Of a stretch of DNA of 64,000 bases, positions 31,456-56,579 are shown piece by piece. A program made the position numbers and the translations under genes. The notes beneath the pieces were generated by a model. The model saw only the letters and a list, made by a program, of their open reading frames with translations. It searched no databases and had not been told where the DNA came from. Position 1 is the stretch's first letter; each line of letters opens with the position of its first letter. The DNA comes from Ostrea edulis (lineage: Eukaryota): the NCBI RefSeq assembly GCF_947568905.1, contig NC_079164.1, positions 25,606,001 through 25,670,000 on the forward strand, given 5' to 3'.

Positions 31456-32376
31456 GTTTATGATATAATAATCATATAGTTTGTCACACCTCTCGTAATC
31501 AAACATTTGTGGATCAGATTAGTCACTGTGGCATATAGAATACATAGCCTGTGTGACAGTTCATAAGTATGCCCAGCATTTAGACCATCATGATAGTGGA
31601 TGACTGAACGTGCCGTTATGTAAGCATTAAATGTTTTAAAATCAGAAATAGATGACAATAAATGATTTGATAGAGCAGCAACTTACATGTACGATTTTCA
31701 TCCACCACTTCAGAACTACGATATCCGCTATGTACCTAAACCATACACTGGGTCATTGTCTACAATATACCAGGACTTCTGAATTGATTTTATCATAAAT
31801 TTACAGCCCGGATTTACCTCCCGTGGATTTGATGAAGTTTTCAGTTGACGTGGTAGAAGATCTGGTGAAAACCAAATTCAAATTGATCAACTTGCTGAAA
31901 CTTCTTCTGAAAATGCATGTATGTTGTGTACATCGTCTAATCAAAAATAGCTATATTGTATTAACAGCATGTATACATGTACGTACATGGTAGGTGTCTT
32001 GAAATATATGGAATATTTGGACTATTGAAAGAAAATATGATAGCGAACGACATTTGACAAGCCCTGTTCGTGTTTTCGACGGGAGATCATATATTAATTA
32101 TCTTTCAATACAGTTACAATCAATTGAGTTTATTGTAGATCACAATATCAAGTTAATGCAGTAAGGGAATATATTATAAACAATGGAAGCACGGGTTTCG
32201 TGTAAGATAAGATAATACAAGTTACAGATACCCGATACTTCCATTTTTCTAACTGACAACAAATGTATAACCTCGACTCATGGTAGCATACGAGAGCAAT
32301 AATTTCCAGAGGAGCGATGGAGTTCTGGTGATGTCTGTCGATAAGTGTCTGATAGGCTTTGATTTCAAATTGAATT

Positions 32377-33550: not shown

Positions 33551-34639
33551 TGATTCACCCCCGCAACATTTTCGATCATTCTAAACATTTTCTGACTTTC
33601 TTTACGTAGATAAAATGATATTCTATGTTTCTTAGTCCATATATAAATTTACAACCTGCACATTACAATTTGTGAGGTTCTATTCTACCTTTTTAACAAT
33701 TCAGACATATTCCAATTTCTCGATTAATTCATACTATGCGCCATGTTTGAGCTGAACTTCCGGTTGTCAAGTTACATGTAATTGCATATTCCGATATAAG
33801 ATCATATAAGATAGTGTTTTACTTCATGGATGAGTACGGAGGAGAAAACTATTTTGTCGGTATTGAAAGGGTTCAGATTTGAAATCAAGTTAAAAACGAA
33901 CAGCAGATTGTAATTTTTTTTTCTGCCACCGTATGGTTTTCTTTATTTTGTCGGAATGGCTGAAGTAACTACATTTTCGAGCTGATTGTCAATGTTTAGG
34001 TTTTTCAGTAGATCCACCTATGAGATCTCTTGATAATAGACGAAGAATTTTACATGCTGTACATGATATTTATTTAAAAACACCTTTATTAGACGTGGCC
34101 AAGCACTGAGTTGGTACTCATTTTAGTGTAAACATTGGAGACAAGTATTCGGAGCTTATTATCGGTCATTCATAAAAATATTTTGCACCATTACGATCAT
34201 TCTATGACATTGTAGCCCCCTCCCGAAAACGTCAGAATAAAGAATAGGAGAGGACAACATTATTGCAGTTAGATAGATATGTATTAAAGTGACACCAAAA
34301 TATCATAATAAGGAAAAACAATTTGAGATATACTCAATTACACTTTGATTTCTAACCCAGCGTTTTCATCATTTTTGTATTATCATAAATCAATTATAAA
34401 ATATCTTAAAATGAATAAGAAATTTTACGTAACGTTTTCTTATTTAACAGTATATTATATATAAATCAGGAAATTGTTGTGTAAGAGGTATAACAATAGT
34501 GAAAATATCAGCATAATAATTTCGTAAAAAGCAAAAACCCATGGTGTCACCTTAATGACTATGATGCAGGGCGGCCTAGTGGATCCTCCCTACCAATACA
34601 AACAATCTAACCCTTAAACAAATAACAACTAAATAAATA

Positions 34640-35135
34640 ATTGCCAGAAGAGTGACGAGAGTTGTGTTGGTTCCTGTTCATGTGTATCTGATAGGCAAAT
34701 TTTATGGTCGTTATGGTCGTTGTAACGATCTGATTTACCAATACAGATTGTCATTGGGTAAAATGCTGTCTGGCCAATTGAGGTCGTTCTTTGCATACTG
34801 ATTACGAACAATGATCAATCTCATAATTTCCATAAAGAATACGCAATTAAGAGTACGACAAAGCACAAACACCTGGACAAATCCCAGAGGTGGGATAAGG
34901 CGTCTAGTAGAAGTAAGCATTTCCTGTTGACCGGTCACACCCGCCATGAGCTCTCTATCTTGATCAGGTAAACTGAACTGAATAATTAAGGAAGGTGAAG
35001 ATAACGAATAGTTATCAACCTCATAACTCCTATAAGCAATACAAAATAGAGAGTTGGGCTAGCACGGACCCCTGGATATACCAGAGATGGGTGCCTAGGA
35101 GTAAACATCCCCTGTTGATCGCCCACTTCCGCTGT
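34640..35135 (-). mobile_element. Two Penelope-like 3' end fragments
   Basis: Reverse complement of the family 3' UTR at ~34700-34960 and ~34990-35135. Confidence 0.75.
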
Positions 35136-36524
35136 GAGCACTATGTTTTCATCGGATAAACGGAGTATTTTTTCATTGATGGAAGTACATTATGTGTACC
35201 ACGAACCCCCCCCCCCCCCGAAAACTGTATCATTGCGGATAGTGTATGTAGCTAAGTTTCCTGGAGGGTTGTCACAGCTTCCAAAGGTGGATATAAGAGA
35301 GTGTTGTAAAGGGTAATGCAAGTTTTGAAGGTGAATTGCTAAGACATTGCTTTTGATGGTCATTGCAGTGCCTGTTTTAAATTCGTACGGAAACTTCGTT
35401 CCCATGTCCACTCATGAACGTAATATGCCGGAGTTCGAAACCGTCGTCGTTAGAGGTTTGAATATTGCAGTCGCTCTGAGGCAGTGTTCGATGTATTTTG
35501 AGAACCAGAATTTCTAGAAATGTCAGAACCGCTACGGTTCAAATGACAGACATTACCGTGAACCACACATTCTCTTGTTGTGGAGACACCAGTGCAGCTT
35601 TTAAACAGTGATTCGTGTCTGTGACATGACGAAGTTGTCGCAGGGTGTAAACTGGACAATTGTCATCCCCGGCTGAGTACATCTGACTATCAGAATTGCA
35701 GAAGCAGACGTGTGCTATTTCTGTTTCTATTTTCAAATAGTCATTTTATTTTATTTTGCATAATTATTTGCTTACTTATTATTTATATTCGATATTTGTT
35801 TGTTTCTGTTGAATAAATTTATTTAGAGCGATAGAATTGTTAAGTTTTTCTGTATTCAACTGTATGTAATAAGACACTTATAAGAACCTTTTAGTATCCA
35901 AGATATACTCTTCAAAAATTAAAAACAAAAGACAATCTCTTTAAAACGTAGACATTTTCACCATATAGATAAAGGAACAGCAAGTTGCATGTCATTGATA
36001 GATGAGATTAGATTAAATCTATTATGAGTAAACTCAGGGCATTTGAAGAAAAATTGACAAGCATTTTCAGTATGGTGGCAACAAATGGAATTATCTCGTA
36101 AGAAGTGACCTTTATGATCTGCATTTAGATTGCTTGCATTGTTTCTATGTTGACAATAGAAAATAGTTCCTTTGCGTTTACCAGAATCAAAAAGTTTACT
36201 AGATTGTAAGCAATATAATTTTTAAAGCAGTTTTAAATGATGAAAGTGATATACATGCATCTTCGTATTGTAATTGATGTGTGCAGGCTGATATATAAAC
36301 TTCCCGTTAAATTATTCACATCATTATTAAATATGGTTTTATTTCTGAATGTTGTTGATGCAGGAAATTCCGGAAAATTGCAATTAAAATGCATAATGCT
36401 AAGAGTACAATATCTATGATGAAACCCATTTGAATTTGAATATAAACATGTAAATTTGAATGTAAAACCTTTCGAGATCTTGCTATAGCTTACATATAAT
36501 GTTTGACATATAGAAACAATAGTT

Positions 36525-37019
36525 ATGTATACATGTAATTTAATCGTATGTGTTATTTTGACCGCGATTCCGGTATATAATTCTACAGCAGGATGTAACA
36601 TAAACGGGTAAGTAACCATGCTAATTATGACAGCTGGAGATTCTTCTTCTATCAACTTCAAATGTATACTGCACATATTTAATTGTATAAATTCATACTG
36701 TGCTGTATGTTGCATTGCCTTTATTTACTTTCATAAGTTTGTAGGTGAGTTTGAGTTTTACATTACAATGTACATTTGTCATATGTTACATATATGCTTG
36801 GAGGTGTGGCAGTTCATACAATTGTAACGGATAGAAAATAAGAACCGAGAATTTAAGGAGTAATTTACGTCTTCTGCAAGTCTTTCAAGTGCCGATTTTC
36901 TGTCGTTTTGTAATATACAGATGTGCCAGGAATATTTTGTTAATTTTCAAGGAATTCTAAATCGGTTAATTTTATCGACATTATCAACACCTGGCATATT
37001 AGCGAATTGAATTGAATGG

Positions 37020-37068
<49 letters not shown>

Positions 37069-40000
37069 CATAAAGACAACTAGAAAAACCACAAAAACTC
37101 AAAAGTTCCATGTTCATTTTGACCATACATGTATTTTATTGTGTAGAAGTAGGCAGAGCATACATAGACCTTCTCCTGAGGTAGAAGATGATAAAAATTT
37201 TAACATTATCAATCAAATTAGTTGCAAGTCTAGCAGAAATATCAAGAATAACTAAAAGTACATATAGCCTTAACTCGATATCTATAGCAAGCACAAGAAA
37301 ATATAAGTATCTATGACTCACGTGTAATGATAAAAAGGGTTAGATGTAACCGCGTTTACATAAATTGTATCTTTATACATTACGGCAAATGTAGCTATTT
37401 TCATTCCAGGTCTAACCCATGTGGAGAAAATTCCAGATTGTTGGAATCTGGAAAATGTGAAGGTAAATGCAATCCTAAATTTAAAAAAAATGAGTCCATC
37501 AGAGAAGCGTACTAGATTGCCGCGCTGTTAAAAGGTTTTATATCAAATCTAATAAGGTACCTCTTTTGAGGAAAGGTATAGATATATTTCTTCTTTCCAG
37601 CTTGCGAGGCTGGTAGATATGGTTGTAACTGCTCTCTACTCTGTCCCAACAATACATTTGGTGTAGGCTGTTACTCCACATGTAACTGTTCTGCTGATGA
37701 GATTTGTGATCCCGCAACAGGATGTACTAGCAACACCAGTGTTTCCTCATATACAACAGGTAAATTTCTCTATAAACATTTATATAACAGAGTTATGAAA
37801 CGGGTAATATTTTCTATTAGTTGAACAACAGATTGATTTCCCTATGAGCTATACAATAGATTTCCAGAGTTAGACAACATATTTCCCCATGTGCTATGTA
37901 ACAGGTAGATTTCCCATGCGTTATATAACGGGTAGCTTTCCCATGAGTGATATAACAGATAAATTTCCCATGAGTGATATAACAGGCAGATTTCCCATGA
38001 GTGATATAACGGGTAGATTTCCCATACGTTATATAACGGGTAGCTTTCCGATGCGTTATATAACAGGTAGATTTCCAATGCGTGATATAACGAGTAGATT
38101 TCCCATGCGTTATGTAACAGGTATATTTTCCATGCGTTATATAACGGGTATATTTCCCAAGCGTTATACAACGGGAAGATTTCCCATACGTTTTATAACG
38201 GGTACATTTCCCACATGTTATATAACAGGTAGATTTCTCATGTGTTATATAACGGGTAGATTTCTCTTGCGTTATATAACGGGTAGATTTCCCATGAGTT
38301 ATAAAACGGGTAGCTTTTCGATGCGTTATATAACAGGTAGATTTCCCATGCGTGATATATCGGGTAGATTTCCCATGCGTTATGTAACAGGTAGATTTTC
38401 CATGCGTTATATAACGTGTATATTTCCCAAGCGTTATACAACGGGTAGATTTCCCATGCGCTCTATAACGGGTAGATTTCCTACGCGTTATATAACAGGT
38501 AGATTTCTCATGTGTTATATAACGGGTAGATTTCTCTTGCGTTATATAACGGGTAGATTTTCCTTGTGTGTTATACAACATATATCCCCATGACTTATAC
38601 AACAGGCATATTTCCCTATGAGCACATTATCCTATCAGTTACAATTAGAATGGCGATTATATTTTCTCTAAATATACATTACTTGAAGTAAAACGCTCAT
38701 TGAGCGACCTGATTTGGAGACCAAAACCACTAGATACCGATATTTTCTTTCTCAAAAGTATTCTATGAATTATTAAAATCGATTTTGTAAGTTAATAGAT
38801 GATATAATAATTTTGTTACGTTTTACCGATTTCGTGGCAACATACACATTATGAAAGGTGGGGATAACGAACAGTATTCAATTCCATAACTCCTATAAGC
38901 AATACAAAAAATAGCGAGTTAAGGAAACACGGACTCTTGGACACACCACAGGCGGGATCAGGTGTCTAGGAGGAGTAAACATCCCCTGTCGACCGGTCAC
39001 ACCCACCATGAGCCCTATCTTTTGCTCAGGTAAACGGAGTGATCCGTAGTCAAAATCAGTGTGACAAGAACAGCCTAACAATCGGTATGAAATAAGTGAG
39101 ACAGCATTTGACCGAATGAAAGCTTGTATTGGCCAACTGCATCGTTATAGCGACCATAGAATTTGCGAAAAGCTGACTTTAAACGAGACTGTTGAAACCC
39201 CTGCACCATCAATTTGTTTGTCAGTAGCTTTCCTCGATTTTAGTTTGCCGTTAATAACTATCCAAGTATGAAGCAGATGTGGAAGACTCATGGTGTTTTT
39301 CATCTCGAGTTAACAGAGATATATCGAATCGACATTCGAATGAAAATGGTTGTTTTGTCCTCATCTAGAAATTTTTGAATTAAAGCTGACATGTATTAAT
39401 AAATATATACTACTCAAAATATGATAAGGATCATAGATATTTTTCTGTTAAAAAAATTAATAACTGCATAACTGGCAATATTGTGTCCAAGTGAAATAAA
39501 AAACGTCTTCAACAAACTCGCACGTACATTTCATGGCATGGGAAATGCGTTGCTCATCACAGTTTCTGCTTTTGCTACCATTGCATGATTTTCACTCAGG
39601 CATCGGTGTCTGATTCTTTCTAAAATTTCAAACTCACTTGAGTGTTTACACTACGTTTATCAACACAATGCCCCCTCAACGTGTAAGGCGTCGCCTGACG
39701 ACAGAACAACTGGGCAGATGTATTGGAATGCTTGACGCTGGCTATTCACAACGTGACGTTGCAAATGCACTAAACGTCAGTCAGAGTGTTGTAAATATGG
39801 CCTGGAACCGACAGCAAACTTTTGGCACAGCAACACACCGACATGGGGGTGGTCGTCAGAGGTCGACAACCCAACGCCAAGACCATTTGGTGGCTTTTCA
39901 GGCACGACGCCATCCCTTTGGGACAGGAACCAGCTTACGTAACGACCCCCTGAACGCCTCGGGGGTGAATTTCTCCACTCAGACGATGCGGAATCAGCTC

Positions 40001-41897
40001 CACAATGCAGGTCTCAACTCGAGAAGGGCACCTGTTCGAGTCCCTCTGACTGTTCGACACCGGCGGGAGCGATTGAACTGGGCTGAAGATCATGTAACTT
40101 GGACACAGAACGATTGGGTTCAAGTTCTGTTCACCGATGAGTCTAGGTATTGTTTGGACTTTACAGACAGGAGGCACCGAGTGTGGCGACGACAACGTGA
40201 ACGTTTCCATGATACCAACATCAGTGAACATGACTGTTATGGTGGTGGTTCCATCATGGTCTGGAGTGGACTCAGCAGGGATGGAAAAACAGATGTTCAT
40301 GTCCTGGAGAGAGGAACAATGCCGGGGGTGCGGTACCGGGATGAGATCCTCGATGTTTACGTCAGACCCTACGCCGGTGCTGTTGGCCCTGAGTTCATCC
40401 TGATGGATGATAACGCCCGTCCTCATCGCACCAGGGTGGTGGAGCAGTACCTTCAGCAGGAGATAATTTTCCGTATGGACTGGACAGCGCGCTCGCCGGA
40501 CTTGAATCCGATTGAGTATGTATGGAACATGCTGCAGGTTGCCCTTTCACGCCGTAGAGCACAACCCACGACTTTGACAGAGCTCGGAAACGCCCTCGTG
40601 GAAGAGTGGAACAACCTTCCCATTGGAAACATCCGGGTACTTATTGACACCATGGCTCGACGTTGTCAAGCCGTCATTGATGCAAGGGGAGGCCATACCC
40701 GGTATCGACACTTCATCGACTAAGTGTAATGATGGACTATCCCCCAAAACACTGTAATTCTTTCTCTGGTTTGCTGTTAACTTTTTGTAATGAAATGCCT
40801 TTTGGTGTTGTTATCAGATTTCAAGCATTCCGTATCGATCAAAGTGCATGCCGTTCATGAATTTTCATTCATAACCTGAGTAAACACGTTTCTGAGTCAA
40901 ATTTATGTCTTTTGTTATGTTAGTGGTAAATTACACACATATAACCTAGTGATCCTTATCAAATTTTGAGTAGTATAGTATAATTCTATAAGTCCGCCAT
41001 ATTTCTTTGCTAATCCGCCATATTATTTGGATATTCTATTGTTATATGTATCGGGGTTCGCATGGTATATAAGGGGACGACTTTATCTACGCTTCACTTC
41101 ACATCAGTTTCTTTGATTTATCTGTGTGGGTAGCTTCGACAGGTAAACACGTACATCTCCGATACTAATTTATAGGACATCAAAAGGAAATGAAATCACG
41201 CTTTGGAACACCACGCAGTGCTAAAAATTATAATAAGCATATCGCATAGTACTAAATTATTCTAGAGGTTTGGATAAATAAATATAGAATGCCTTTTCTT
41301 TACGTGAATGTTCGTACATTTGCAGTAAATATGTCAAAACTATACAAGAAAACGCGGAGAAATATTTCATCTATCATCTATTGATAAAATGGATTAAGCA
41401 AAAGGTATAAAATCTATACCATTCACACTTACTTCAAGCAAAATGCAAATACATAAATACTACTTTACTTATGCACGCGACATGTATGCTCGCCATGAAA
41501 ATGCATCGAATGCGGACGATTATTTACCTGGGTCTACTCGTAATATATGTAAAGGATCGCAGATGTACGTGTACACTTGTGGAAAATACTCTAAGTAGTA
41601 GTAAAACTCCCTTTATTTGCATAATCCATGAAACAAAACGATAAACTTCATTTGTATTTGTACAGTAAATGGCATCGCCCATAGTACAGACTGCGACACA
41701 CTTAGCCCGTGCCGATCAGCTATCTTCAATCAGGGGAAGTATGAGAGTATAATATTTACCCTGTATTGTGCATGAATCCTTATACCGTATGAGTTACTGG
41801 TCAGAGTACTGCAGATTTATAAATCAGGAAATCATTTAGGTACATAAATTGTTTGTGCATAGATAATTTGCTTATACAACACTGTACCAGTGCATGG

Positions 41898-41948
<51 letters not shown>

Positions 41949-44029
41949 TCAATCGGTGATCTTGTAATAATCACGCTCTTATCAAGACAAATTATATCGT
42001 TAATTCAATAAAATAGAACCGTAACTCAATATTGTTCTCATTGATTGATAATACAGATTTATTTGATTCATTTCAAGCACGCAATAATTAAAGATTAAAC
42101 ATATCTTTAAATAATGTTATTTTCAATTACTTCCTTTTATGCTAATTTGGCATTCAATAGATCTTTTATATATCTATGCTATTTTGCATTATTGCATTCT
42201 GCGTTGAACTCGACGCAAATTTATTATACTAATGCAAAATGTAATAATTAAGTTTATCATATTATGCGTCGCTATCAAACACATAGAATCAAGGTGAGGG
42301 GACAAGAGTGACTATCCCCCACCTTTAATAACAATATCCATTATTTGTTATTTTGTAATGCAAATAAAAGATATATTGGGTGACAACCCCTTCCTCCCAC
42401 TTGACCCCAGCTTAAACGTTCTGATATAATAGTAGAAGACACACACCACCACCAATTAAGAAAATGAAGATATTATGAGGCACTCATAGTAGAGGATTCT
42501 AACCACCCCATCCCACCCCCAACGATTGAATAAAATGAAGTGTAGGGAGAAATTATTGAGGCAGTCAAAGTAAAAGACTCGTTAACCCTTCACACCCACA
42601 TTAGGACTGAACATTGGACCAAACATCTTGGTTTTTTTTTTTATTTTATTGCTGTTTTCCTTCATCTTTTATTTCGAATGGCAAGAAATTTTGAAGAATC
42701 CATTTTTCATTTTTTTTTCTTCCTGTTGTACCCCCTCCCTCATGAAAAATGACAATACATGTCTGGTTATTACATGTACATTTTGCTTTGCAACATATGC
42801 ATGTATACTGATTGTATGGTGTAGAATTTCACCCTTTACCAAGTTTTCCTTCATTTATGCAGTGTAAGAAATGGTAAACTAAAATCACAAAACAAAATGC
42901 ATAAAGACCAAGATATATTTAAACGTAGGAATTTCATTCACGAATACATAAATACATGTCTTCAGAAAAATCGCATGCATGCATTGCAGGACTATATCAT
43001 ATGTGTGATTTAACGTTTCTATAACATGCCATAATGATTACTTTCAGGCTTGAGTGTAATTTATTCATAAATATTTTCATTTCGTAGATCTAGCGCAATG
43101 GATATATACTGAAATAAGACATACCTCTGTACGTCGAAATTTCAATTTCAAATGTATTCGATATATATAAGATGTTAGTATTCATAAATCAGTAAAATTC
43201 GTGTTAAGGTTTTATTTGATATGATACAGTGTCAATATACTGTAATGCATTAGTAAGATATGCAAAAGGCAAGAGTAGAAACATTTTCCTTTTTCATTAT
43301 TAGTATCAATATCTATATGATCACGAAAAAAAACACGATATAATTTATATCCGGATTCATATACCGATTTAGATATCAATAAAAACAAAGCTGCATAGTT
43401 TGGGGAGGGGGTTCTAATGGGTCTGATGAAATTAAAAGAAGGAACCCCACATTTACATTCAAACTAGATGTATTTCAAAATGATTTCATTTCTGCTCTGA
43501 CTGAAAGTATATGCATGATTCTAAAGTCGGGAACGAATCTTACATAGAAAATAATTAATAGGGGAACACATAAATTCGAGCTCCTTTGGAATTTAATGAA
43601 ATGTAGGTATGCCCATTTCTTTTGAAACGAATGGATATGTTGTTTTAGGCACCTATACAGGGGGTTTGGGTGGGCAGGGAGGCTGATCTGCTTTCCCCCA
43701 CGTTTTTGACAATTTACTTCTTTCCGTTATTCTAACATACAAAGTCAGTATTTTCTACATGCGCAGTTCAAAGCAAGGTGAAGACAACGATCAGTGATCA
43801 ATCTCATAACTCCTAAAAGCAATACAAAATAGATAGTTGGGCAAACAAAGCTATATTTTTTTAAATTGTAATGAATTCAATTATAAGCAGCAACTATTGT
43901 AAGTTTCCAATATATTGTAATTCACAAATTTTTAAGTAGCTGGAAATTTTTAATGCTTGTAAGCTTACATTTATATCAGTGATTGATTTTCTTTCCTTCT
44001 GTGAAATGATATATTGTACATACAAGTAA

Positions 44030-44080
<51 letters not shown>

Positions 44081-47000
44081 GTTAAGTCAATGAATATGGG
44101 CATACATAGACCGTAATTAAGTATATGGTCACCAAAGAGACAATGAAATTATATTTTCGTTTATACATTTCCTTTTATGTGTCTTTGTGTAATCAATTGT
44201 TTATTATTGATTGCAAATGCAATACCCGCATTTTCACACAGGTGTATATTTCTATCATTATTCCCTTATTTGTATATCCAAGTTTGTATATGATCATCAA
44301 TAAATTTTGAATTGTGCACGCAATATATCCAACCAGATGCTAGGTGTATATCATTAGATTCCCGATTTCTATAAACTGCAAAACCTCGACCAGACAAGCA
44401 TTCAATACAGGAAAACAAATATCGACTCTGACATCTCCCCTGATTGAAAACACCCTGTTTGGCCCTGGTGAAGTGTGTCGCAGTCTGTACAATGGAACGA
44501 CAACGTGTTGTAAAGTTCTAACGAGATACAAATAGGGTTTATCATTTTGTTTCGTGGATTCATCATAATAAAGAGAATCTAATATTTTCGGTAGGTGCAC
44601 ATCTCCGATACCTGTTGAGTAGACATCCGTATTTGATAAGTTTTACAGAATGGAACATTCTAATGTTTTACTGATGTAAAAGATGTGGTTGGTACAAAGA
44701 ACTTTTTAAGCTATTATTGTCTTATTTCAAAAGTACCCAAAAAGATTAAAAGACAAATTGCTGATTTTAAAAACAAAGTACATCATGAATTTTTGAGTCC
44801 AAATCAATGCATTGTACAGAAATGAACTCTAGTTCTAATGTTAAATTGTTATATCAAGTTTTGAAGGAAAAGGAGTTCATAGCCCCACAACTCAAAAGAG
44901 AGAAGTGGGAAACTTATCTCAGTGAAACTATTTCAGGAAAATGTTATACTTAATTTTACTGTATGAACGCATCATTAAGCACAAAGAAACAAAATTAATT
45001 GGTTTTCAATACCGTAGTATGTGTTATATAGCTACAAACTCTTTCCTTCACAAACTTAAAACTTGTAGACAATGACTTGTGTTCATTTTGCAAAAGCGAA
45101 AGAGAAACAGTCACTAATATTTTTTATGACTGTGCGTATGTATCTGCTTTCTGGAGAGATTTTGTGAAATGTTACAATGCACTTGAAAAAGATTATAAAA
45201 TCACAAAAAGAATTGTGTTGCTAGGCAATATTGATGGAAGCTGGTTGGAAAAATTTCTTCTTTTGTTAGCAATAGAGCACATCTATTACTCCAGATCACA
45301 GGGCTCAAAACCCAAATTGTCAGATGCAATTGATTTGTTTAAATACTATAGAAATTTATAAAACTATTGTCAAAATGTATTTCATAGCAAATCCAAAATG
45401 CTTGGTAAATGGGCATTGTATGATAATATAATGGACAAATAGTTTGTTGAAAATCACTATACATTTATATGAAAAATAAAACAATTACCTTTATCTTTAA
45501 ATTTCCATGTTTATGTGTGTATTTATATTTATGTGTGTGTATGTATATGTTATACATGTATATATTATATATACAATTCATTGTAATTGTTGATTTAGAA
45601 GGTGCACGGAGTAATTGCAAATGTGAATGAGCGAGTGAAGATTACAGTTTGTATGTATAAATGTTTTGAAAACACAAAAATAAAACATTAAAAAAACAAA
45701 GGAGCACAGTTCGTGCCCAGGGGATTTCCAAGAGACTGTAAGAAGACCTGATCACCAAAGACCACGAAGATTTTGTCAATGAGGAACTCCAGCATATTTT
45801 TTATTTCAACTTCAGAGTACTTGTGTATGGAATCAGAGCGGCGTTTACCAAAATATTTTTTGGGATGACTGATCACTAAATAGGAATATTTGCGTTTTCC
45901 ATTTTTGTTGATAAAGCAACTATCTATGATGTCAAAAAGTCTAGTCTTTAATTTATCGCGAGGAATGGTCGTGTAAAGAGTTGAAAAGTCGTACGTTTTG
46001 ATGTTGATTTGAGAAAGGTTTTGTGATTTCAAGTTTACTAAAAGTTCTTTGGAAGTTTTATTAGAATCCACATTTGATTTACACCACATCGGGCATATGT
46101 AGTTGCACAGTACGTTTGAGTAGAATAAATATTGATAACATGAACCCATTTCAATCCGTAGTAGTTTAAGTTAATCTTACTGAAAATCGTAGTCTGAACG
46201 CAATGCAGATTAGATATTGTGTGTGAAGTTTACTAATGTTATGCCAATCCCAGTTTGAACCACCCTAAGTAACACGATACGCGTAATCTCCAGTGATTTT
46301 CTTGATTGAAAAGAAATGTCAATTTAAACCAGACACAGTTGATCAGTCCCCATACAATTGTAGATGGATGGTCGTATAATCACTCATTACATCGAGTCAT
46401 ATGAAATGCAAAACATTTTGTATATGGCATTTTTAAATATTTCAATCCGACTCCTGTGTAACGACCATGGGTGTTTGTTTCTTTATGATAATTCAGACAA
46501 TATCATACATGTACCACATATCATCCGTCTACTGATTTGTTTATTTATCTAGAAGCTCAAGAGACGACAACAGTGCTGAGAAATAGTGCAGCGCCATTAG
46601 CGCCATTAAAGCCATTGAGGATGTTCAACATTGTTATTATTGCCTTAGCAGCCTCATTGGTAATAGTGGTTACGCTGAGCATTTCCTGCATAGTTATTGT
46701 ATTAAGGTAATGATAATTATCTATCATAATATCAGTTGTTGTGTCACAATATCCCTGTCTATTGTAGCTAAACTTTTAATTCTCTTTTTATGTCCCCCAC
46801 CTACTTGAAGATTCAGGGGCACATATTTTTGGTTTGTCTGTCTGTGTGTCTGCAAAACTTTAACACTAGTCCTAACTTTTGAATAGATGCTAATATAGCT
46901 TTTATATGTTACATGTGTAATGTATTCCTGGTGACATAACCTTCTTTGATTATCAAAAGATTTGACCTCGTGATCGTTTGACTTGTTTTTGAGTAATATA

Positions 47001-48945
47001 GACCAAAGCCATAACTTCTAAGTGTTTAGTAATATGTCTTTTATATTCCACATGTACATTCCTTTTGAAAAGACCTTTCTTTAAGTAACATTTTTTTAAA
47101 TACCTCATGACCTTGACCTATTACCTACTTTTGAAATGTTAACCTTGGTCAAAACCTTTGAACGGGTTGGACTAAGGCTTTGCTATTTCACATGTACGTG
47201 TCTTCTTTGTAATAATAGTTTTCATTTCTGAATTTGTAATTTTGACCTTGGGGTTTGACATACTTTTGAAAAACTTTAACCTTGGCCCTTATCAACTACG
47301 TCGCAATTCGGGTGCATCAGTGTTTTACAAGCACAGATTGTTTCATTGTGTGATTGTATGACTGAAAGTTAGGTTTAACAAAAGCCTTCAGAAATTTAAG
47401 ATAATTATCGATTCATATGGAGGACAAGTTGTAAAAGTGACAAACATCAAATGTCAATGTGTTTTTGAAAAGACTCTAGGGATTTGAAATTTTGGGAAAG
47501 TCACTCAACAGGAAAATAAGATTTAGCAACGCATAGATACATTGTACATGTATTTATTTTCACTATATTTTTTAGTGCTGTAATAACAACGCATAAATAC
47601 ATGTATTTATTTTTACTGTATTTGTCTGTAGACGAAACTCGAAAAAGGGGACAAAAACAGCTACGAGTAAGTGCCCTAATGTTTTTATTATCGTTGAAAT
47701 AACAGCGTGCCACTTCGCTTGATGGAGCGTGCAAATTTCAATCACTGATTGGTCATGTAGTTTCAGTAAAGTGAGTTTGGATGACCACGTTATGCCATTC
47801 TTTCAATGAAGCCGCACCTAAACATTTGCAGGGTGATCAAGCTGTCATGCTGTTACTGAAATAATTGCATTAATTATTGAAATAAAACTCACTGCAGTCA
47901 TTGTTACCATAAACTAATGGACAGTAAGATAAAAAAAAATCTAGTATGGAACACGTAATGTCAATTGCTGCGAAATGAAAAAAGCAGGCTCGCAAATTCA
48001 GCTCTAAAATTTTTAAAACTTTCCAAACTCATTGATGATGAATATCATCAATAGCATTAAAATCACCAACCTTTATCTCTTTATGACGTCACAATCCTAT
48101 TCTGTTGTATTATGACAAAATCATCTGCGACTATATTCTCTGTGTTTGAGATAGTGTAAATATGCTATATTATTCGCCAACTTTCGATTCAAATTTGCTG
48201 ATAAGATAAAGAGCAATCATTAATTATGTAATAATCAACAAAACATTTTTAAATCTGTGACTGAGTAGATATCATATAGATTGTTAAACATTCGCAATAT
48301 GTATCTATTCATAACAAAGTCTTGCAATTTCGCCCCGCTTCTAAGAAAGACTCTAATATTTCTATAAATATGTAGAGAAACAATGTGATAATTTATGAAA
48401 TTCCAAATTGATGGAATTGAAGTTATGCCATTCGCAAAATAAATCTTTAAAATGGATAAAGTTTTTGATTTTAAAAATACAACTTTGTAATACGGATTAA
48501 TACTGTATATTTGTAAAATTATCTTAACGATAGATATATATTATGAATAAAAGGTGTCATCAATTCTAACTATCGTTTAGAAACAAAGAACAGCGAAGAG
48601 ATGTCTGAGACCGCGGAACAAAATCCAGATTCCCATTCGTACCTTACCATCAGCGAAAGATCCTTTCGTCTGTATGCCGATGTTCACTATGACGAAGCGG
48701 AGGAAAGGAAGAGCTTAACATCAGTATCATTACACAGTAAGGGATACGATACCAGCGTCAGTGATAAAAGTGAAGGATCCGATGATTATCTAACACCGAC
48801 AGTAAAGACTGCCAAAAAAGACACAACCGGTAGTCAGTCATCTGTAACACCGACAGTAAAAACTGCCCAAAAAGATGCAACCGGTAGTCAGTCATCTGGC
48901 GATTATGACGATACCATCACAAAATGTTCAGAAACCTGTATCTGA
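36525..48945 (+). CDS. Gene D: chimeric receptor, class II (E/B-type) ectodomain spliced to C-type TM and tail Y (282 aa, open frame)
   Basis: Exons 36525-36607 (MYTCNLIVCVILTAIPVYNSTAGCNING), 37410-37462 (SNPCGENSRLLESGKCE), 37601-37759 (EGF-like), 46553-46706 (TM, in-frame 9-bp duplication), 47632-47666, 48581-48945. All GT-AG; 849 nt. No B-type TM exon and no C-type exons 1-3 were seen between 37760 and 46552. Confidence 0.75.
37024..37066. repeat. (GA)n microsatellite (further GA/CT runs at ~41901-41943, ~44033-44077, ~56529-56575, ~61082-61119, ~63205-63257)
   Basis: Pure dinucleotide runs at matching positions in the two units, with different lengths. Confidence 0.95.
37886..38570 (+). 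repeat. 27-bp minisatellite (~25 units) in gene D intron 3
   Basis: Consensus GCGTTATATAACRGGTAGATTTCCCAT; 9-aa periodicity (RYITGRFPM) in ORF 37889-38593. Confidence 0.95.
38857..39345 (-). mobile_element. Penelope-like 3' fragment in gene D intron 3
   Basis: Starts AAGGTGGGGATAACGAACAGT (3' end, reverse complement) where homology to gene B intron 3 stops. Confidence 0.85.
39408..40975 (+). mobile_element. Full-length Tc1 element (1568 bp) with 26-bp TIRs and TA target duplication
   Basis: Left TA|TACTACTCAAAATATGATAAGGATCA, right TGATCCTTATCAAATTTTGAGTAGTA|TA (1 mismatch). Confidence 0.95.
39668..40723 (+). CDS. Tc1 transposase, DD34E, uninterrupted 351-aa ORF
   Basis: N-terminal HTH region, VLFTDESRY, MDDNARPH and SPDLNPIE with 34 residues between D and E. 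The TGA stop of the 28-kb copy is CGA here, extending the ORF by 5 aa. Confidence 0.9.
   Translation: MPPQRVRRRLTTEQLGRCIGMLDAGYSQRDVANALNVSQSVVNMAWNRQQTFGTATHRHGGGRQRSTTQRQDHLVAFQARRHPFGTGTSLRNDPLNASGVNFSTQTMRNQLHNAGLNSRRAPVRVPLTVRHRRERLNWAEDHVTWTQNDWVQVLFTDESRYCLDFTDRRHRVWRRQRERFHDTNISEHDCYGGGSIMVWSGLSRDGKTDVHVLERGTMPGVRYRDEILDVYVRPYAGAVGPEFILMDDNARPHRTRVVEQYLQQEIIFRMDWTARSPDLNPIEYVWNMLQVALSRRRAQPTTLTELGNALVEEWNNLPIGNIRVLIDTMARRCQAVIDARGGHTRYRHFID
43774..43852 (-). mobile_element. Penelope-like 3' tip (copy at ~62947-63022)
   Basis: AAGGTGAAGACAACGATCAGTGATCAATCTCATAACTCC...TTGGGCAAAC. Confidence 0.75.
44639..46130. mobile_element. Duplicated L1/Tx1-like 3' fragment (+, 44639-45697) and Penelope-like fragment (-, 45698-46130)
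   Basis: Copies of 22470-23537 and 23538-23985; ORFs CSFCKSERETVTNIFYDC and YDFSTLYTTIPRDKLK..GTNCAP. Confidence 0.85.
46785..47343 (+). mobile_element. HINE-like element in gene D intron 4 (copy of 24619-25170)
   Basis: Same termini and subrepeats. Confidence 0.7.
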
Positions 48946-49064
48946 GCATGACGATTAAATACAGATTGCTATCATAGAAACATAAGGCATGTTTGATGTA
49001 ATTAAAGCATGAGATGTTTCTTTTAACTTTTGCCGTTAATTCCCAGCTCTTTCCCTGCCTACAT

Positions 49065-49345
49065 TTTACAGAATTTGCGAAATGCTGATTTTAAACGAGA
49101 CTGTTGAAACAATGCATTGTAACATCAAACTATTTGTCGTTAGTCTACCTCGATTTAAAAAACTGTTCATACGCATAACATGTTCATAAGCATCGAATCA
49201 GTTGAGAGACATAAACACCATATGTAGGTGATGATGGAATATTGTTATATAAAGATGGTAGGTTGACGATGGAGAAGCTGAAATCATCCCCTTTACCATA
49301 AAGTTGAGTTGTTAGTCTACCGTCAATATCCATGTTCAACAACCT
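49065..49345 (-). mobile_element. Penelope-like RT fragment (copy of 26865-27140)
   Basis: LTTQLYGKGDDFSFSIVNLPSLYNNIPSSPTYGVYVSQLIR. Confidence 0.8.
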
Positions 49346-50997
49346 AATTTTGATGCAATTCATCAAATCGGCCACTAAGATTTTAAGATATTCTAAACTA
49401 GTTCCATGAAACACGAAAAATGTAAGATGAAATATTTTAAACAAAATCAAGAAACAATTCGAGTACTCACTTTAAAAAACATTAACCACTACACGAGTAA
49501 CGTGTGTTCAGCAGAGGGTTGATATTTATCAGTGGACACGTACCCGGTTACACCAAGGATTTTGCAATACATATTTCACAAAAATGTTTCTTGTCTACTA
49601 AGCAAGAAATGAATTTATTCAATACATTTACGATGATTACGATGATTATTCAACATGGATTTAATTTAACATAATCCTTCAATTCCTTAAATCTATAGTC
49701 CCGAGACAATGGGCTTTTACCAATGGTTCAGTCAAGTGACCTAATGTATCTTACCAGCTGATGTCTCCAGCTCACTTTGACACTGGGGTACAGACTCTTT
49801 TTTTTTTTTTTTTTTTTTTTTTAGACATTATTGCCAAGTGTCAAAGCTACGATGGTTAATCAGCTAGCCAACATAAACCGTAAGGCTTATTCAGCCCTAA
49901 TGTAGCCTTATACTTACAAAGGATCGGCTTTTCTGCGTCTCTTTTGTGGACATTTCTGCTTCGTTGTGGAGATCAGACAAAATGATCTGCGGTCGACCAA
50001 TATATAAATAGCATTTCCCGAACTTATTTCACTGCAAGGGAAACATGTTATCAAACATGATTGGATGAAGTTCAAAAAGTGAAACATTATTTATTCTCAA
50101 ATCATATAACAGTATCATGTGTATGTGAAAATTCTATTAGTTTTACACAAGATATTTTATTATTAAAATGCAGTTAAGCCCTCTTGTTCTCATCAGGACG
50201 AAATGGGGACTTAAAAGCGACCAACATATTTTTTTCACGCCCCTCTAAATTGAAATCCACAATTCGCCCTTGCTCATTGGAAAATTTGCATTGAAAATGC
50301 TTAAATTCACCATCATGATGGTACGCAGATTGAGTAAATGAATATTATTAGATTTTGAGTTTCAATAGATTGCAGAACCAAACTTGCTTCACAAATGTGC
50401 TGAATGTGTCATAGAATGAAATGGCAAGACATACCCTGTATCTATATCATATGATGATGGCAATATTACTCGCTGGATTAGCTATACTGCGGATGTTTTC
50501 AACTCTGATTTGCACGTCGCGGATCTTAAGCAAAGCAATAACCGAATATACATGCATATAAATATTTGCGGCTGTAGCATATTGAAACCAACTTAAATTA
50601 TTCTAATCAATTCATTTATTTACTTACATTGTGATATCTGGAATGTTATAATGAGTTGTTTCTATAATTCATACACTGTCATTACGGGGAATACTTGTAC
50701 AAGATACGTATAAAATCGTTAATTCATAATATTTATTTAATAACGAATAAAAATGAAACGTATTAATTGAAATTATAAAGAGTTACTTGTATATTTATAC
50801 ATATCTCTAAAAATCTTTAATCAGAGCTTTTATAGTATATCAGTGTGTACAATTTTACCAAAACAACAGAGGATCATAAGATAATACGAAACTGGAAGAA
50901 ATTGCTAATATCTGCTATATGTAAAACTTTTACATTTTACATTTACGTTATTTGCATTTAGACTAGTCAGATTCCCAACATTATCTACGTTGCAGTA

Positions 50998-51520
50998 GCA
51001 TGTCAAGAACGGCCTGACAATTGGTTTGAAACACGTCCGACAACATTCGACCTAACGACACGTTGTATTTGTAGATTTACATCATGGTAACGATCATAGA
51101 ATATTCTAAATGCTGACTTTAAACCAAACCTTGGAAACCCTTGTAACATCATCTTACTTGTCAGTAGCCTGAATCGATTGAAAAAAACAGATGAAACCCT
51201 AATCATTCATGCGTATCGAATCAATCGAGAGATATGAACACGATTTGCAAGTGGCAATGGAATATTGCTACATAAATATAGGAAGTTAGCGATGTTAAAG
51301 CTGAAGTAACCTCACTTGTCATAAAGTTGAGTTGTTAGTTTGCCGTTAACATCCATGTTCAATAACATCTCTAAGTACAATTCTGAAATGGGAGACTCTG
51401 TAGTGCCTTTTATTTCGCATTCACTGAGAGATATCGAATTAGTAATAGATAAACGTCATCGTTATACTGGTTGCAGATCTATCTGTAGATTTGAAGGCCA
51501 CAGCAAGAATTCTTTCTTCT
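50998..51520 (-). mobile_element. Penelope-like RT 3' fragment
   Basis: LLTSKMMLQGFPRFGLKSAFRIFYDRY; mostly absent at the matching position in unit 1 (~31435). Confidence 0.75.
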
Positions 51521-54129
51521 CGTATGCAAGGTTTATGATATAATAATCATATAGTTGGTCACACCTCTCGTAATCAAACATTTGTGGATCAGATTAGACA
51601 CAGTGGCATATGGAATATATAGCCAGTGTAACAGTTCATAAGTATGTCCAGTATTTAGACCATTATGACAGTGAATGACTGAATGTGCCGTTATGTAAGC
51701 ATTAATTGTTTTAAAATCAGAAATAGATGACAATAAATGATTTGATAGAGCAGCAACTTACATGTACGATTTTCATCCACCACTTCAGAACTAGGATATC
51801 CGCTATGTACCTAAACCATACACTAGGTCATTGTCTACAATATTCCAGGACTTCTGAATTGATTTTATCATAAATTTACAGTCCGGATTTGCCTCCCGCG
51901 CATTTGATGAAGTTTTCAGTTGACGTGGTAGAAGATCTGGTTGAAACGAAATACAAATTGATCAACTTGCTGAAACTTCTTCTGAAAATGCATTTATCTT
52001 GTGTACATCATCTAATCAAAACTAGCGATATTGTGTTAACAACATGCACACATTTAAGTACATGGTAGGTGTCTTGAAAGATATGCAATATTTAGACCAT
52101 TGAAAGAAAATATTATAGCGAACGACGTTTGACAAGTCCTGTTCGTGTTTTCGACCCGAGATCAAATATCAATTATCTTTCAATACAGTTACAATCAATT
52201 GAGTTTATTGTAGATCACAATATCAAGTTAATGCAGTAAGGGAATATATTATAAACAATGGAAGCACGGGTTTCGTGTAAGATAAGATAATACAAGTTAC
52301 AGATACCGATACGTCCATTTTTCTAACTGACAACAAATGTATAACCTCGACTCATGGTAGCATACGAGAGCAATAATTTCCAGAGGAGCGATGGAGTTCT
52401 GGTGATGTCTGTCGATAAGTGTCTGATAGGCTTTGATTTCAAATTGAATTTAAAGACTCCCTGATTGCACACTGGAAAGCAGTGCTTTGCCGTTGTGGAG
52501 GATCCAATACACTGACTTAGGATCTAGTAAATCGTCCCTGTGTGTAAGTATTGTACATATTGTGGTTACCATATGATAATGCTCAAACTAATTCAGCAAC
52601 CCAAGTACTGTACTCAGTACCTGAAGGATGTCATACACTGACCAATAATCTAGTAGATTGTCCCTATGTAAGTACTTACAGTGGTTACTATATACTGTAT
52701 TCAGACTAAGTCAGCAACCAAAACATTGTACTCAGCACCTGTAGGATAGAGAAGAATGAAAACATGATTTTTTATTAATATTCATAAAACTTCGTCTTGA
52801 ATTTAACTGCAGAATTGGCAGTCTGTAGCTAAACGGTCAAATATTTTGGAATGGGTGAACTAGATATTAAATTGCCACCAAATCGATGCGTATGTATTAG
52901 CTGCAATAATGTAGCCCTTTCCGATTTTGGTTGTTTGTTTGTTTGTTTTTGTTTGTTTTGTTTTGTTGTTGTTGTTTTTTGGAATGGAGGCTAGAACTTA
53001 GGATCTTCGTAATGGTGCAGATGCTGGAGTGATCATAAAGTGATTCATCCCCGCAACATTTTCGATCATTCTAAACATTTTCTGACTTTCTTTACGTAAA
53101 TAAAATGACATTCTATATTTCTTAGTCCATATATAAATTTACAACCTGCACATTACAATTTGTGAGGTTCTATTCTACCTTTTTAACAATTCAGACATAT
53201 TCCAATTTCTCGATTAATTTATATTATGCGCCATGTTTGAGCTGAACTTCCGGTTGTCAAGTTACATGTAATTGCATATTCCGATATAAGATCATATAAG
53301 ATAGTTTTACATCATGGACGATTACGGAGGAGAAAGCTATTTTGTCGGCATTGAAAGGGTTCAGATTTGAAATCAAGTTAAAAACGAACAGCAGATTGTA
53401 TTTTTTTTTTCTGCCACCGTATGGTTTTCTTTATTTTGTCGGAATGGCTCAAGTAACTACATTTTCGAGCTGATTGTCAATGTTTAGGTTTTTCAGTAGA
53501 TCCACCTACGAGATCTCTTGATAATAGACGAAGAAGTTTTTAAAAACACCTTTATTAGACGTGGCCAAGCACTGAGTTGGTACTCATTTTAGTGTAAACA
53601 TTGGAGACAAGTATTCGGAGCTTATTATCGGTCATTCATAAAAATATTTTGCACCATTACGATCATTCTATGACATTGTAGCCCCCTCCCGAAAATGTCA
53701 GAATAAAAAAATAGGAGATGGCTACATTATTGCAGCTAGATAGATATGTGTTAAAATGACACCAAAATATGATTTCTAACCCAGCGTTTACATCATTTTT
53801 GTATTATCATTAAACCAATTATAAAATATCTTAAAATCAATAAGAAATTTTACGTAACGTTTTCTTATTTAACAGTATATTATATATATTATATATAAAT
53901 CAGGAAATTGTTGTGTAAGAAGTATAGCAATAGTGCAAATATCAGCATAATAATTTCGTAAAAAGCAAAAACCCATGGTGTCACCTTAATGACTATGACG
54001 CAGGGCGGCCTAGTGGATCCTCCCTACCAATACAAACAATCTAACCCTTAAAAAAATAACAACTAAATAAATAATTACCAGAAGAGTGACGAGAGTTGTG
54101 TTGATGCCTGTTCATGTGTATCTGATAGG

Positions 54130-55936: not shown

Positions 55937-55964
55937 GCAAGGTGAAGATAACGAACAGTGAACA
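55937..55964 (-). mobile_element. 28-bp 5'-truncated Penelope-like insertion with 6-bp TSD (TTACAT)
   Basis: TTACAT[GCAAGGTGAAGATAACGAACAGTGAACA]TTACAT; the matching site upstream of gene D (~36490) has a single TTACAT. Confidence 0.85.
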
Positions 55965-55999
55965 TTACATATAATGTTTGACATATAGAAACAATAGTT

Positions 56000-56523: not shown

Positions 56524-56579
<56 letters not shown>

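What the first reader, a model, noticed from the sequence alone, without database searches (positions are those of the whole stretch)
36525..48945. Tandem duplication with breakpoints in intron 3 of two paralogs creates an in-frame chimeric receptor (gene D)
Seen: 22470-44638 is repeated at 44639-63819. The unit starts inside intron 3 of gene C and ends inside intron 3 of gene E, so the junction at 44638/44639 joins E-like exons 1-3 to C-like exons 4-6. Both introns are phase 1, all splice sites are intact, and the joined CDS is 849 nt without a stop (282 aa). The junction shows no extended homology (..TATTTGATA|AGTTTTACAG, falling inside a LINE fragment), which points to non-homologous joining rather than unequal crossing-over between repeats. 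Inference: one event gave a recognition module a new TM and signalling tail while leaving both parents intact.
Basis: partly seen in the sequence, partly recalled or inferred. Interest (0 to 1): 0.9.

Follow-up and report, generated by a model that had tools for sequence, protein, structure and literature searches.

The report
Oyster receptor gene made by tandem duplication
In the flat oyster genome, a 20-kb stretch was copied in tandem with its ends inside the introns of two related receptor genes, making a third intact gene that joins one gene's outer sensing part to the other's membrane anchor and signalling tail; this is a clean example of a known way of making new genes, but its expression is untested.

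Summary
The window is Ostrea edulis chromosome OX387704.1, 25,606,001-25,670,000. Segment 22470-44638 recurs at 44639-63820, with 4.0% non-coding divergence plus indels.

The left breakpoint lies in intron 3 of gene C and the right one in intron 3 of gene E; both introns are phase 1. The junction gene D has six exons with canonical splice sites and an 849-nt open CDS. Its 282-aa product is identical to RefSeq XP_056017210.1.
- Exons 1-3 are E-type: signal peptide plus a SCARF/MEGF-type EGF-like ectodomain, 96 of 98 residues identical to E.
- Exons 4-6 are C-type: stalk, TM and a tail with an ITAM-like motif.

New here:
- E's own TM and tail exons lie beyond the window and are of a different type.
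- The same junction and an intact D-like gene (D2) occur again 200.7 kb downstream, so the junction is not an assembler artefact.
- The whole family shares intron phases 2-1-1-2-1, so any intron-3 swap stays in frame.
- The window's E has a 25-nt frameshifting deletion in its last exon.

Not shown: transcription and the 37759-to-46553 splice.

Verdict: a real, fairly old chimeric gene; a new member of a known kind.

The parts
22470..44638 (.). Duplication unit 1 (22,169 bp): distal part of C intron 3, C exons 4-6, intergenic DNA with transposons, E-type promoter and exons 1-3, proximal part of E-type intron 3
   Evidence: Self-BLAST blocks at 93-97% identity to unit 2; non-coding divergence 4.0%
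44639..63820 (.). Duplication unit 2 (19,182 bp): same content; its C-type exons 4-6 form the 3' half of D and its E-type exons 1-3 form the 5' half of E
44629..44648 (.). Junction 44638/44639 (TATTTGATA|AGTTTTACAG): a blunt, non-homologous join. The second genomic copy has the same join plus an 11-nt direct duplication (CGTATTTGATA)
36525..36607 (+). D exon 1: start codon and signal peptide (E-type; identical to E exon 1 at 56000-56082)
   Evidence: hydropathy peak at residues 6-24
37410..37462 (+). D exon 2: N-terminal Cys-rich half repeat (E-type; identical to E exon 2 at 56916-56968)
37601..37759 (+). D exon 3: EGF-like repeat (E-type); its donor CAG|GTAAAT opens the 8,793-nt phase-1 chimeric intron
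   Evidence: similarity to SCARF1 EGF-like repeats, E 2e-4
46553..46706 (+). D exon 4: stalk and TM helix (C-type), with a 9-nt in-frame insertion relative to C exon 4 (24395-24539)
   Evidence: hydropathy 2.81 at residues 130-148
47632..47666 (+). D exon 5: basic juxtamembrane micro-exon (C-type)
48581..48945 (+). D exon 6: cytoplasmic tail Y with the ITAM-like YLTI-x7-YADV motif, and the stop codon
20726..26763 (+). Parent gene C (LOC130046482, XP_056013184.1): exons 20726-21021, 21308-21357, 21466-21696, 24395-24539, 25459-25493, 26399-26763. The left breakpoint 22470 lies in intron 3
56000..57265 (+). Parent gene E (LOC125653181, XP_056014920.1), exons 1-3 (56000-56082, 56916-56968, 57107-57265). 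Exons 4-6 lie off-window at 65124-65271, 65359-65390 and 70130-70386 in extended window numbering. The right breakpoint 63820 lies in intron 3
13240..20110 (+). Gene B (306-aa product): the older paralog of E, with the same E-type ectodomain, TM and tail X. It shows what E's 3' half looks like
22858..22983 (+). zf-RVT remnant of a non-LTR retrotransposon inside the 22333-23535 insertion that holds the left breakpoint
   Evidence: Pfam PF13966, E 1.9e-5, 25.6 bits against a cut-off of 27.5; the insertion is absent from C' intron 3
28105..29498 (+). Tc1/mariner copy present in unit 1 only (inserted after the duplication), with an open 326-aa transposase ORF at 28243-29223
39601..40983 (+). Tc1/mariner copy in E-type intron 3, shared by both units (58919-60172 in unit 2), so older than the duplication

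Best explanation
SHOWN
- In an Ostrea edulis cluster of small single-pass receptors, a segment of about 19-22 kb running from intron 3 of gene C to intron 3 of gene E was duplicated in tandem by a non-homologous join.
- The duplicated segment carries C's 3' exons at its left end and E's 5' exons at its right end. The junction therefore places the E-type promoter, signal peptide and EGF-like ectodomain (exons 1-3) upstream of C's stalk, TM and tail (exons 4-6).
- Both introns are phase 1, as in the whole family, so the hybrid intron of 8,793 nt keeps the frame.
- The result is gene D: 849 nt, 282 aa, identical to RefSeq XP_056017210.1.
- The event is old. Non-coding divergence between the units is 4%.
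- It predates a second copy of the whole block 200.7 kb downstream, which carries the same junction and an intact D2.

INFERRED
- D is a type I membrane protein that binds whatever E binds, because the ectodomains match at 96 of 98 residues.
- D would signal through C's tail, whose YLTI-x7-YADV motif is conserved across oyster genera. This probably works by tyrosine phosphorylation and recruitment of a Syk-type kinase.
- E would signal through a different TM and tail.
- Expression of D is not shown.
For: Duplication and boundaries.

D model: open CDS, canonical splice sites and identity to XP_056017210.1.

Parentage:
- D exons 1-3 against E: 100%, 100% and 97.5% nt identity.
- D exons 4-6 against C: 90.7%, 98.7% and 96.1%.
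- E's own exons 4-6 encode a B-type TM and tail X and lie beyond the right breakpoint.
- No E/B-type TM exon lies in D's intron 3.

Non-homologous join.

Second copy:
- Same junction in a second copy, with an 11-nt duplication and two private insertions nearby.
- D2 has all six exons and splice sites intact.

Neutral simulation: with substitution and indel rates taken from the flanking non-coding DNA, D stays intact in 5-19% of runs. D and D2 both stay intact in 1-5%.

Tail and ectodomain:
- The ITAM-like core is invariant in C, C', D and D2, and conserved in Saccostrea, Magallana and Crassostrea homologs.
- The ectodomain matches the SCARF1 EGF-like repeats (PDB 8hn0, E 2e-4).
- Oysters have an ITAM-Syk pathway (PMC6994640).

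Against: - No transcript evidence. No database protein fragment spans the exon 3/4 joint. XP_056017210.1 is a computational RefSeq model.
- On the D lineage, polarised coding changes are about 10 non-synonymous to 5 synonymous. The total rate is close to the non-coding rate, so purifying selection is not demonstrable from substitutions.
- RefSeq's model of D2 starts inside intron 1 and has no signal peptide.
- Gene conversion from intact paralogs could keep the frame open without selection on D.
- The second tyrosine motif ends in V, not the canonical L/I.
Confidence: 0.8

Rival explanations
1. Dead by-product. The duplication is real, but D is only two gene fragments lying side by side. The six-exon model exists only in silico. 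The 8.8-kb hybrid intron is not spliced, or the product has no function, and the frame is open by chance or through gene conversion from the parents.
For: - No transcript evidence was obtainable.
- The D-lineage N:S ratio of about 10:5 and an overall coding rate near the non-coding rate are compatible with neutrality.
- RefSeq models D2 differently, with no signal peptide.
- Exon-level homogenisation does occur in this cluster: exon 6 of B and E2 are almost identical while their flanks are 91-93% identical.
Against: - Under neutral rates from the flanking DNA, both D and D2 staying intact is expected in only 1-5% of simulations.
- All ten splice sites are kept in both copies.
- The only indel in 849 nt is a 9-nt in-frame one, whereas 47 of 55 non-coding indels are not multiples of three.
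- The ITAM-like core is unchanged.
- The E-type promoter region is 96.9% identical to E's.
- The hybrid intron (8.8 kb) is no longer than E's own intron 3 (7.9 kb).
Confidence: 0.3
2. Assembly artefact. The two units are the two haplotypes of one locus, placed in tandem by the assembler, so gene D does not exist in any chromosome.
For: - Oysters are highly heterozygous.
- 4% divergence with large presence/absence indels is not unthinkable for alleles in an immune-type cluster.
- No read depth could be obtained.
Against: - The join is blunt, between unrelated sequences (C intron 3 and E intron 3). There is no overlap that an overlap-based assembler could have used.
- There are no N in the window.
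- The same junction is assembled a second time 200.7 kb away, in a copy that differs by an 11-nt duplication, two insertions and 2.4-3.8% substitutions.
- DNA runs from several other studies hold half or more of the sampled 31-mers of 46400-49000, but this does not test the junction itself.
Confidence: 0.03
3. Unequal crossing-over. The duplication arose by homologous recombination between paralogous genes or dispersed repeats, not by non-homologous joining.
For: - The region is full of paralogs and interspersed repeats.
- A 44-bp repeat lies near both breakpoints.
- The left breakpoint is inside a retrotransposon remnant.
Against: - The 44-bp repeat is out of register: 138 bp before the left breakpoint, against 498 bp after the right one.
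- Nothing else aligns between the two 1.2-kb breakpoint regions.
- At the join itself there is no shared base. Only a GTTTT pentamer lies 1-2 nt inside both partners.
Confidence: 0.05

Closest known systems
[quoted passage not shown]
   Same: One tandem duplication with its ends inside two neighbouring genes unites the 5' end of the downstream gene with the 3' end of the upstream gene and keeps both parents. The layout here is exactly that.
   Different: - Here the parents are paralogs of one receptor family with identical intron phases. The product is therefore a clean module swap (ectodomain against TM and tail), not a fusion of unrelated genes.
- The event is old (4% divergence) and exists in two copies, rather than being a segregating polymorphism.
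- Expression is untested here.
Vertebrate paired immune receptors (KIR, LILR, Ly49, SIRP, PILR); comparison from general knowledge, not tested here
   Same: Two neighbouring genes have nearly identical ectodomains (D and E, 96 of 98 residues) but different TM and cytoplasmic tails. One tail carries an ITAM-like motif. The genes sit in a tandem cluster that evolves by duplication and recombination.
   Different: - The ectodomain is EGF-like, not Ig or C-type lectin.
- The ITAM-like motif is in the receptor's own tail, not in an adaptor reached through a charged TM residue.
- E's tail has no consensus ITIM.
- No functional data exist.
SCARF1 (SREC-I) / MEGF10-11 / Draper class of EGF-repeat receptors
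   Same: The Cys-rich ectodomain aligns to the N-terminal EGF-like repeats of human SCARF1 (PDB 8hn0, E 2e-4). RefSeq names D 'multiple EGF-like domains protein 11'. From general knowledge, Draper and MEGF10 signal through tail tyrosine motifs and Syk-type kinases.
   Different: - D has about one and a half repeats in a 282-aa protein, not many.
- Pfam detects no EMI or EGF domain.
- The tail is unrelated to theirs, so the RefSeq name overstates the relationship.
Oyster ITAM receptor CgIgR, which binds CgSyk (PMC6994640)
   Same: A single-pass oyster receptor whose own cytoplasmic tail carries a two-tyrosine ITAM. It shows that an ITAM-Syk route exists in oysters.
   Different: - CgIgR has five Ig domains and a classical D/ExxYxxL/I-x(6-12)-YxxL/I motif.
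- Tail Y reads YLTI-x7-YADV and has never been tested.

Membership tests
Chimeric gene created by tandem duplication | Two adjacent direct copies of one segment | tested here: met
   22470-44638 and 44639-63820 are colinear at 93-97% identity
Chimeric gene created by tandem duplication | The two breakpoints lie inside two different genes | tested here: met
   22470 lies in C intron 3 (21697-24394); 63820 lies in E intron 3 (57266-65123)
Chimeric gene created by tandem duplication | The junction gene has the 5' part of the downstream parent and the 3' part of the upstream parent, in frame | tested here: met
   D is E-type exons 1-3 plus C-type exons 4-6. Both introns are phase 1. The CDS is 849 nt and open
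Chimeric gene created by tandem duplication | Both parental genes are retained | tested here: met
   C and E are both present with six exons. Caveat: the window's E has a later 25-nt frameshifting deletion in exon 6, while its sister copy E2 is full length
Chimeric gene created by tandem duplication | The chimeric transcript is made | not testable with these tools
No database protein fragment spans the joint
ITAM-bearing receptor | Cytoplasmic YxxL/I-x(6-12)-YxxL/I | tested here: inconclusive
   The tail has YLTI-x7-YADV. Spacing and the first half fit; the second half ends in V. The motif is conserved across oyster genera
ITAM-bearing receptor | Phosphorylation-dependent binding of a tandem-SH2 (Syk-type) kinase | not testable with these tools
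   This needs biochemistry. The pathway exists in oysters (PMC6994640)
SCARF / MEGF10-11 / Draper receptors | EGF-like repeats of the SCARF/MEGF type | tested here: met
   phmmer against PDB: SCARF1 8hn0, E 2e-4, residues 39-98 of the chain
SCARF / MEGF10-11 / Draper receptors | Many tandem EGF-like repeats (with an EMI domain in MEGF10/11) | tested here: not met
   Only about 75 ectodomain residues, roughly one and a half repeats. Pfam finds no family above its cut-off
Paired activating/inhibitory receptors | Near-identical ectodomains on neighbouring genes with different tails | tested here: met
   D and E are identical at 96 of 98 N-terminal residues. Their TM and tails are unrelated in sequence
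Paired activating/inhibitory receptors | The partner carries an ITIM ([SIVL]xYxx[IVL]) | tested here: not met
   E and E2 have no ITIM consensus, only YKKL and YNIL. An ITIM-like IEYLGI exists only in gene A's tail ORF

The most novel reading that the evidence does not exclude
D and E form an invertebrate paired-receptor system made in a single mutational step. The two genes share promoter type and a nearly identical EGF-like ligand-binding module. E signals through its own tail, while D routes the same ligand to an ITAM-like, Syk-coupled tail. The TM-plus-tail cassette (exons 4-6) would then be a module that oysters repeatedly re-attach to new ectodomains. The same cassette sits behind an unrelated ectodomain on another O. 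edulis chromosome. A Crassostrea homolog combines the other TM type with this tail.
Probability: 0.25. Interest if true: 0.7.

Novelty: new member of a known kind. Interest (0 to 1): 0.4.

Why it matters
If D is expressed, it is a clear natural example of how immune-type receptor repertoires diversify in an animal without adaptive immunity. One duplication re-wires an existing recognition module to a different signalling tail, and the original genes are kept.

Three features make the case useful for study:
- Both parents, an older paralog pair (B and C') and a second copy of the chimera (D2) are all available for comparison.
- The breakpoints are resolved to the base.
- The shared intron-phase pattern explains why such swaps are tolerated in this family.

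It also corrects an annotation. The RefSeq name 'MEGF11' hides the fact that the gene is a lineage-specific chimera.

The mechanism itself is well known, so the value is as a clean case and as an entry point to ITAM-like signalling in oysters, not as a new principle.

Tried and rejected
I masked them in my local working copy and also avoided their paralogous stretch in unit 1. Junction-spanning reads, depth and spliced reads therefore remain untested.

2. Transcript evidence through protein databases.
- The D cluster holds only two RefSeq models.
- A search with residues 60-150, which span the exon 3/4 joint, found nothing.
- This is uninformative, because O. edulis RNA-derived proteins seem sparse in that collection.

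3. Pfam on D, C, E2 and the tail found no family above its cut-off.

4. Brute-force enumeration of splice models was far too ambiguous, with 2,461 solutions for the 5' half alone. I replaced it with paralog conservation and exact protein mapping.

5. Hidden TM exon in D's intron 3: rejected. B-type and E-type TM and tail peptides match only at B, A and E's off-window exons.

6. Strict activating/inhibitory pair: rejected. E has no ITIM.

7. Unit tree.
- I expected unit 1 to pair with unit 1' of the second region.
- Distances are instead nearly star-like: 2.1-2.7% in the promoter/exon 1-3 segment, with unit 1 the outlier (3.8-4.2%) in the distal intron segment.
- The order of events is therefore resolved only by the shared junction.

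8. Whether the second region is a true paralogous block or a retained alternative haplotype could not be settled.
- Its upstream C-like gene end is only 93% identical to C, C' or D. That argues for paralogy.
- The 137 kb between the two regions could not be fetched.
Full report
**Source and setting.** The window has no N and is 35% G+C. Protein look-ups place it on Ostrea edulis chromosome OX387704.1 (assembly GCA_947568905.1), at 25,606,001-25,670,000. DNA runs labelled as oyster also hold the sequence. I extended the window rightwards to 90,560 in window numbering, using loci fetched around neighbouring genes.

**The repeat is real.** Self-BLAST gives a colinear chain of blocks joining 22470-44644 to 44639-63826 at 93-97% identity.
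- Outside exons there are 621 mismatches in 15,454 aligned bases (4.0%, K2P 0.041). There are 55 indel events, 47 of them not a multiple of three.
- Unit 1 is 22,169 bp and unit 2 is 19,182 bp.
- The excess in unit 1 includes a Tc1/mariner copy at 28105-29498 (PF01498 plus PF13358, open 326-aa ORF) and a 585-bp internal tandem duplication.
- A second Tc1/mariner copy at 39601-40983 is shared by both units, so it is older than the duplication.

**Genes.** The window holds a cluster of small six-exon genes on the + strand. I mapped four RefSeq proteins back to the DNA residue by residue, using GT/AG introns.

| Gene | Protein | Exons (window numbering) |
|---|---|---|
| C | XP_056013184.1 | 20726-21021, 21308-21357, 21466-21696, 24395-24539, 25459-25493, 26399-26763 |
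| D | XP_056017210.1 | 36525-36607, 37410-37462, 37601-37759, 46553-46706, 47632-47666, 48581-48945 |
| E | XP_056014920.1 | 56000-56082, 56916-56968, 57107-57265, 65124-65271, 65359-65390, 70130-70386 |
| C' | XP_056019065.1 | 74673-80560 |

- Gene B (306-aa product) occupies 13240-20110.
- I had derived the D exons by hand from the sequence before finding the protein. The 282-aa translation is identical to the RefSeq protein.
- All four mapped genes have intron phases 2-1-1-2-1.

**The chimera.**
- The left breakpoint 22470 is in C intron 3 and the right breakpoint 63820 is in E intron 3. Both introns are phase 1.
- D exons 1-3 are 100%, 100% and 97.5% identical to those of E; the encoded 98 residues differ from E at two positions.
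- D exons 4-6 are 90.7%, 98.7% and 96.1% identical to those of C. They show ten residue changes and a 3-residue in-frame insertion.
- E's own exons 4-6 encode a different TM helix and a different tail (tail X). This tail is shared with B (97% protein identity) and, distantly, with gene A.
- Nothing resembling them lies in D's intron 3.
- Homology between B intron 3 and the E-type intron 3 stops at 16971/38856. It resumes only at 65029, after 6.9 kb of inserted repeats that contain the right breakpoint.
- Likewise, the left breakpoint lies in a 1.2-kb insertion (22333-23535) that is absent from C'. This insertion carries a zf-RVT remnant of a non-LTR retrotransposon.

**Mechanism of the join.**
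- The two breakpoint regions share only an out-of-register 44-bp repeat.
- At the join, TATTTGATA meets AGTTTTACAG with no shared base. A GTTTT pentamer lies 1-2 nt inside both partners.
- This fits end joining or a replication-template switch, not unequal crossing-over.

**Older history.** B's 3' half plus C (16966-26535) matches E's 3' half plus C' (65029-80386) at 88-93% identity. The pairs (B, C) and (E, C') therefore come from an earlier duplication. The event studied here then copied the segment between the intron 3 of C and the intron 3 of E.

**A second copy settles the artefact question.**
- The 90%-identity cluster of D has a second member, XP_056017742.1. It is encoded 200.7 kb downstream and is followed by E2 (299 aa) and C'2.
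- That region again holds two units and the same junction. The junction is extended there by an 11-nt direct duplication (CGTATTTGATA) and is flanked by two private insertions of about 640 bp and 275 bp.
- An assembler cannot create a blunt join between unrelated sequences, and certainly not twice with local differences. The duplication is therefore genuine and predates the split of the two regions.
- I could not decide whether the second region is a paralogous block or a retained alternative haplotype. E and C' against E2 and C'2 differ by 1.3-2.4%, but the C-like gene end upstream of D2 is only 93% identical to any copy in region 1.

**Is D maintained?**
- RefSeq starts D2 inside intron 1, yet exon 1 and the exon 2 acceptor of D2 are intact. 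The homology model is an open 849-nt CDS.
- Nei-Gojobori counts for D against C (exons 4-6) give pS 0.096 and pN 0.026.
- Polarised with C', the C lineage has about 6 synonymous and 4-5 non-synonymous changes. The D stem, D and D2 branches together have about 5 synonymous and 10 non-synonymous changes. That is an omega near 0.6, not distinguishable from neutrality.
- Against this, a simulation with the flanking substitution and indel rates leaves D intact in 5-19% of runs, and both D and D2 intact in 1-5%.
- The only coding indel is in frame.
- This is modest evidence for maintenance. Gene conversion from the parents is an alternative explanation.

**What the protein looks like.**
- Hydropathy gives an N-terminal signal-like segment and one strong TM helix at residues 130-148, followed by RRNSKK.
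- The ectodomain aligns to the EGF-like repeats of human SCARF1 (PDB 8hn0, E 2e-4). It has only about one and a half repeats, and Pfam reports nothing above its cut-offs. The RefSeq name 'MEGF11' is therefore generous.
- The tail carries YLTI-x7-YADV. The motif is invariant in C, C', D and D2. It is conserved in Saccostrea, Magallana and Crassostrea homologs.
- An ITAM-Syk route has been shown in oysters for another receptor (PMC6994640).
- E's tail has YKKL and YNIL but no ITIM consensus. A strict activating/inhibitory pair is therefore not supported.

**Modularity in the family.**
- An O. edulis protein on another chromosome (XP_056005796.1, 533 aa, weak C-type lectin signal) shares the TM and tail Y from D residue 119 onward, at 63% identity.
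- A Crassostrea virginica homolog combines an E-type TM with tail Y.
- With uniform intron phases, swaps of the 3' cassette appear to be recurrent in this family.

**What is missing.**
- A protein search across the exon 3/4 joint found nothing.
- Transcription, splicing of 37759 to 46553, read depth and population frequency are therefore untested.

**Verdict.** [quoted passage not shown] This is a tidy new member of a known kind, already present as an unremarked RefSeq model. It is of moderate interest, and would rise if D proves to be expressed and paired functionally with E.

Noticed in passing
L005:10001-22173, L006:10001-24540, L007:10001-15887 (OX387704.1 from 25,843,227): The whole block D-E-C' recurs about 200.4-200.7 kb downstream as D2, E2 and C'2, at 96-98% identity. 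It is either a large segmental duplication or a retained alternative haplotype in the assembly.
   Followed up: partly
L002:24131-24387 (E exon 6; extended window numbering 70130-70386): The window's gene E has a 25-nt deletion in its last exon relative to E2 and B. The deletion shifts the frame and shortens the tail to 243 aa, against 299 aa in E2. The conserved C-terminal EPECLINLF stretch is lost.
   Followed up: yes
window 19672-20115 compared with L006:23300-23745: Exon 6 of B and of E2 differ at only about two bases in roughly 445, while the surrounding DNA is 91-93% identical. This suggests gene conversion or very strong constraint on tail X.
   Followed up: no
window 37881-38560 (unit 2 copy near 57342-57937): A 27-bp minisatellite of about 25 copies (83% matches) starts about 120 nt after the exon 3 donor of D. 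Its unit resembles the end of exon 3 plus the donor. The period is a multiple of three and the array is open in frame. Any effect on donor choice is unknown.
   Followed up: partly
window 28105-29498: A Tc1/mariner copy is present in unit 1 only, so it inserted after the duplication. It has an uninterrupted 326-aa transposase ORF and is 94% identical to the older copy at 39601-40983.
   Followed up: partly
window 20726-21021: The RefSeq model of C (373 aa) begins 73 codons upstream of the Met at 20945, which aligns with the start of C', C'2 and the other homologs. The true C protein is probably about 300 aa.
   Followed up: no
L005:9166-9248 and L005:10084-10136: The RefSeq model of D2 starts inside intron 1 and lacks a signal peptide, although exon 1, its donor and the exon 2 acceptor are all intact in the DNA.
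   Followed up: yes
protein P0003 (XP_056005796.1, O. edulis, another chromosome) and P0007 (C. virginica): The TM plus tail-Y cassette is also attached to an unrelated, weakly C-type-lectin-like ectodomain. In Crassostrea, tail Y follows the other TM type. Cassette swapping appears to be recurrent in this family.
   Followed up: partly
window 32377-33550: A 585-bp tandem duplication (98.3% identity) is present in unit 1 only.
   Followed up: no
window 5195-5767: The tail ORF of gene A contains IEYLGI, which fits the ITIM consensus. The aligned position in B and E2 reads VEELNVGI, with no tyrosine.
   Followed up: partly
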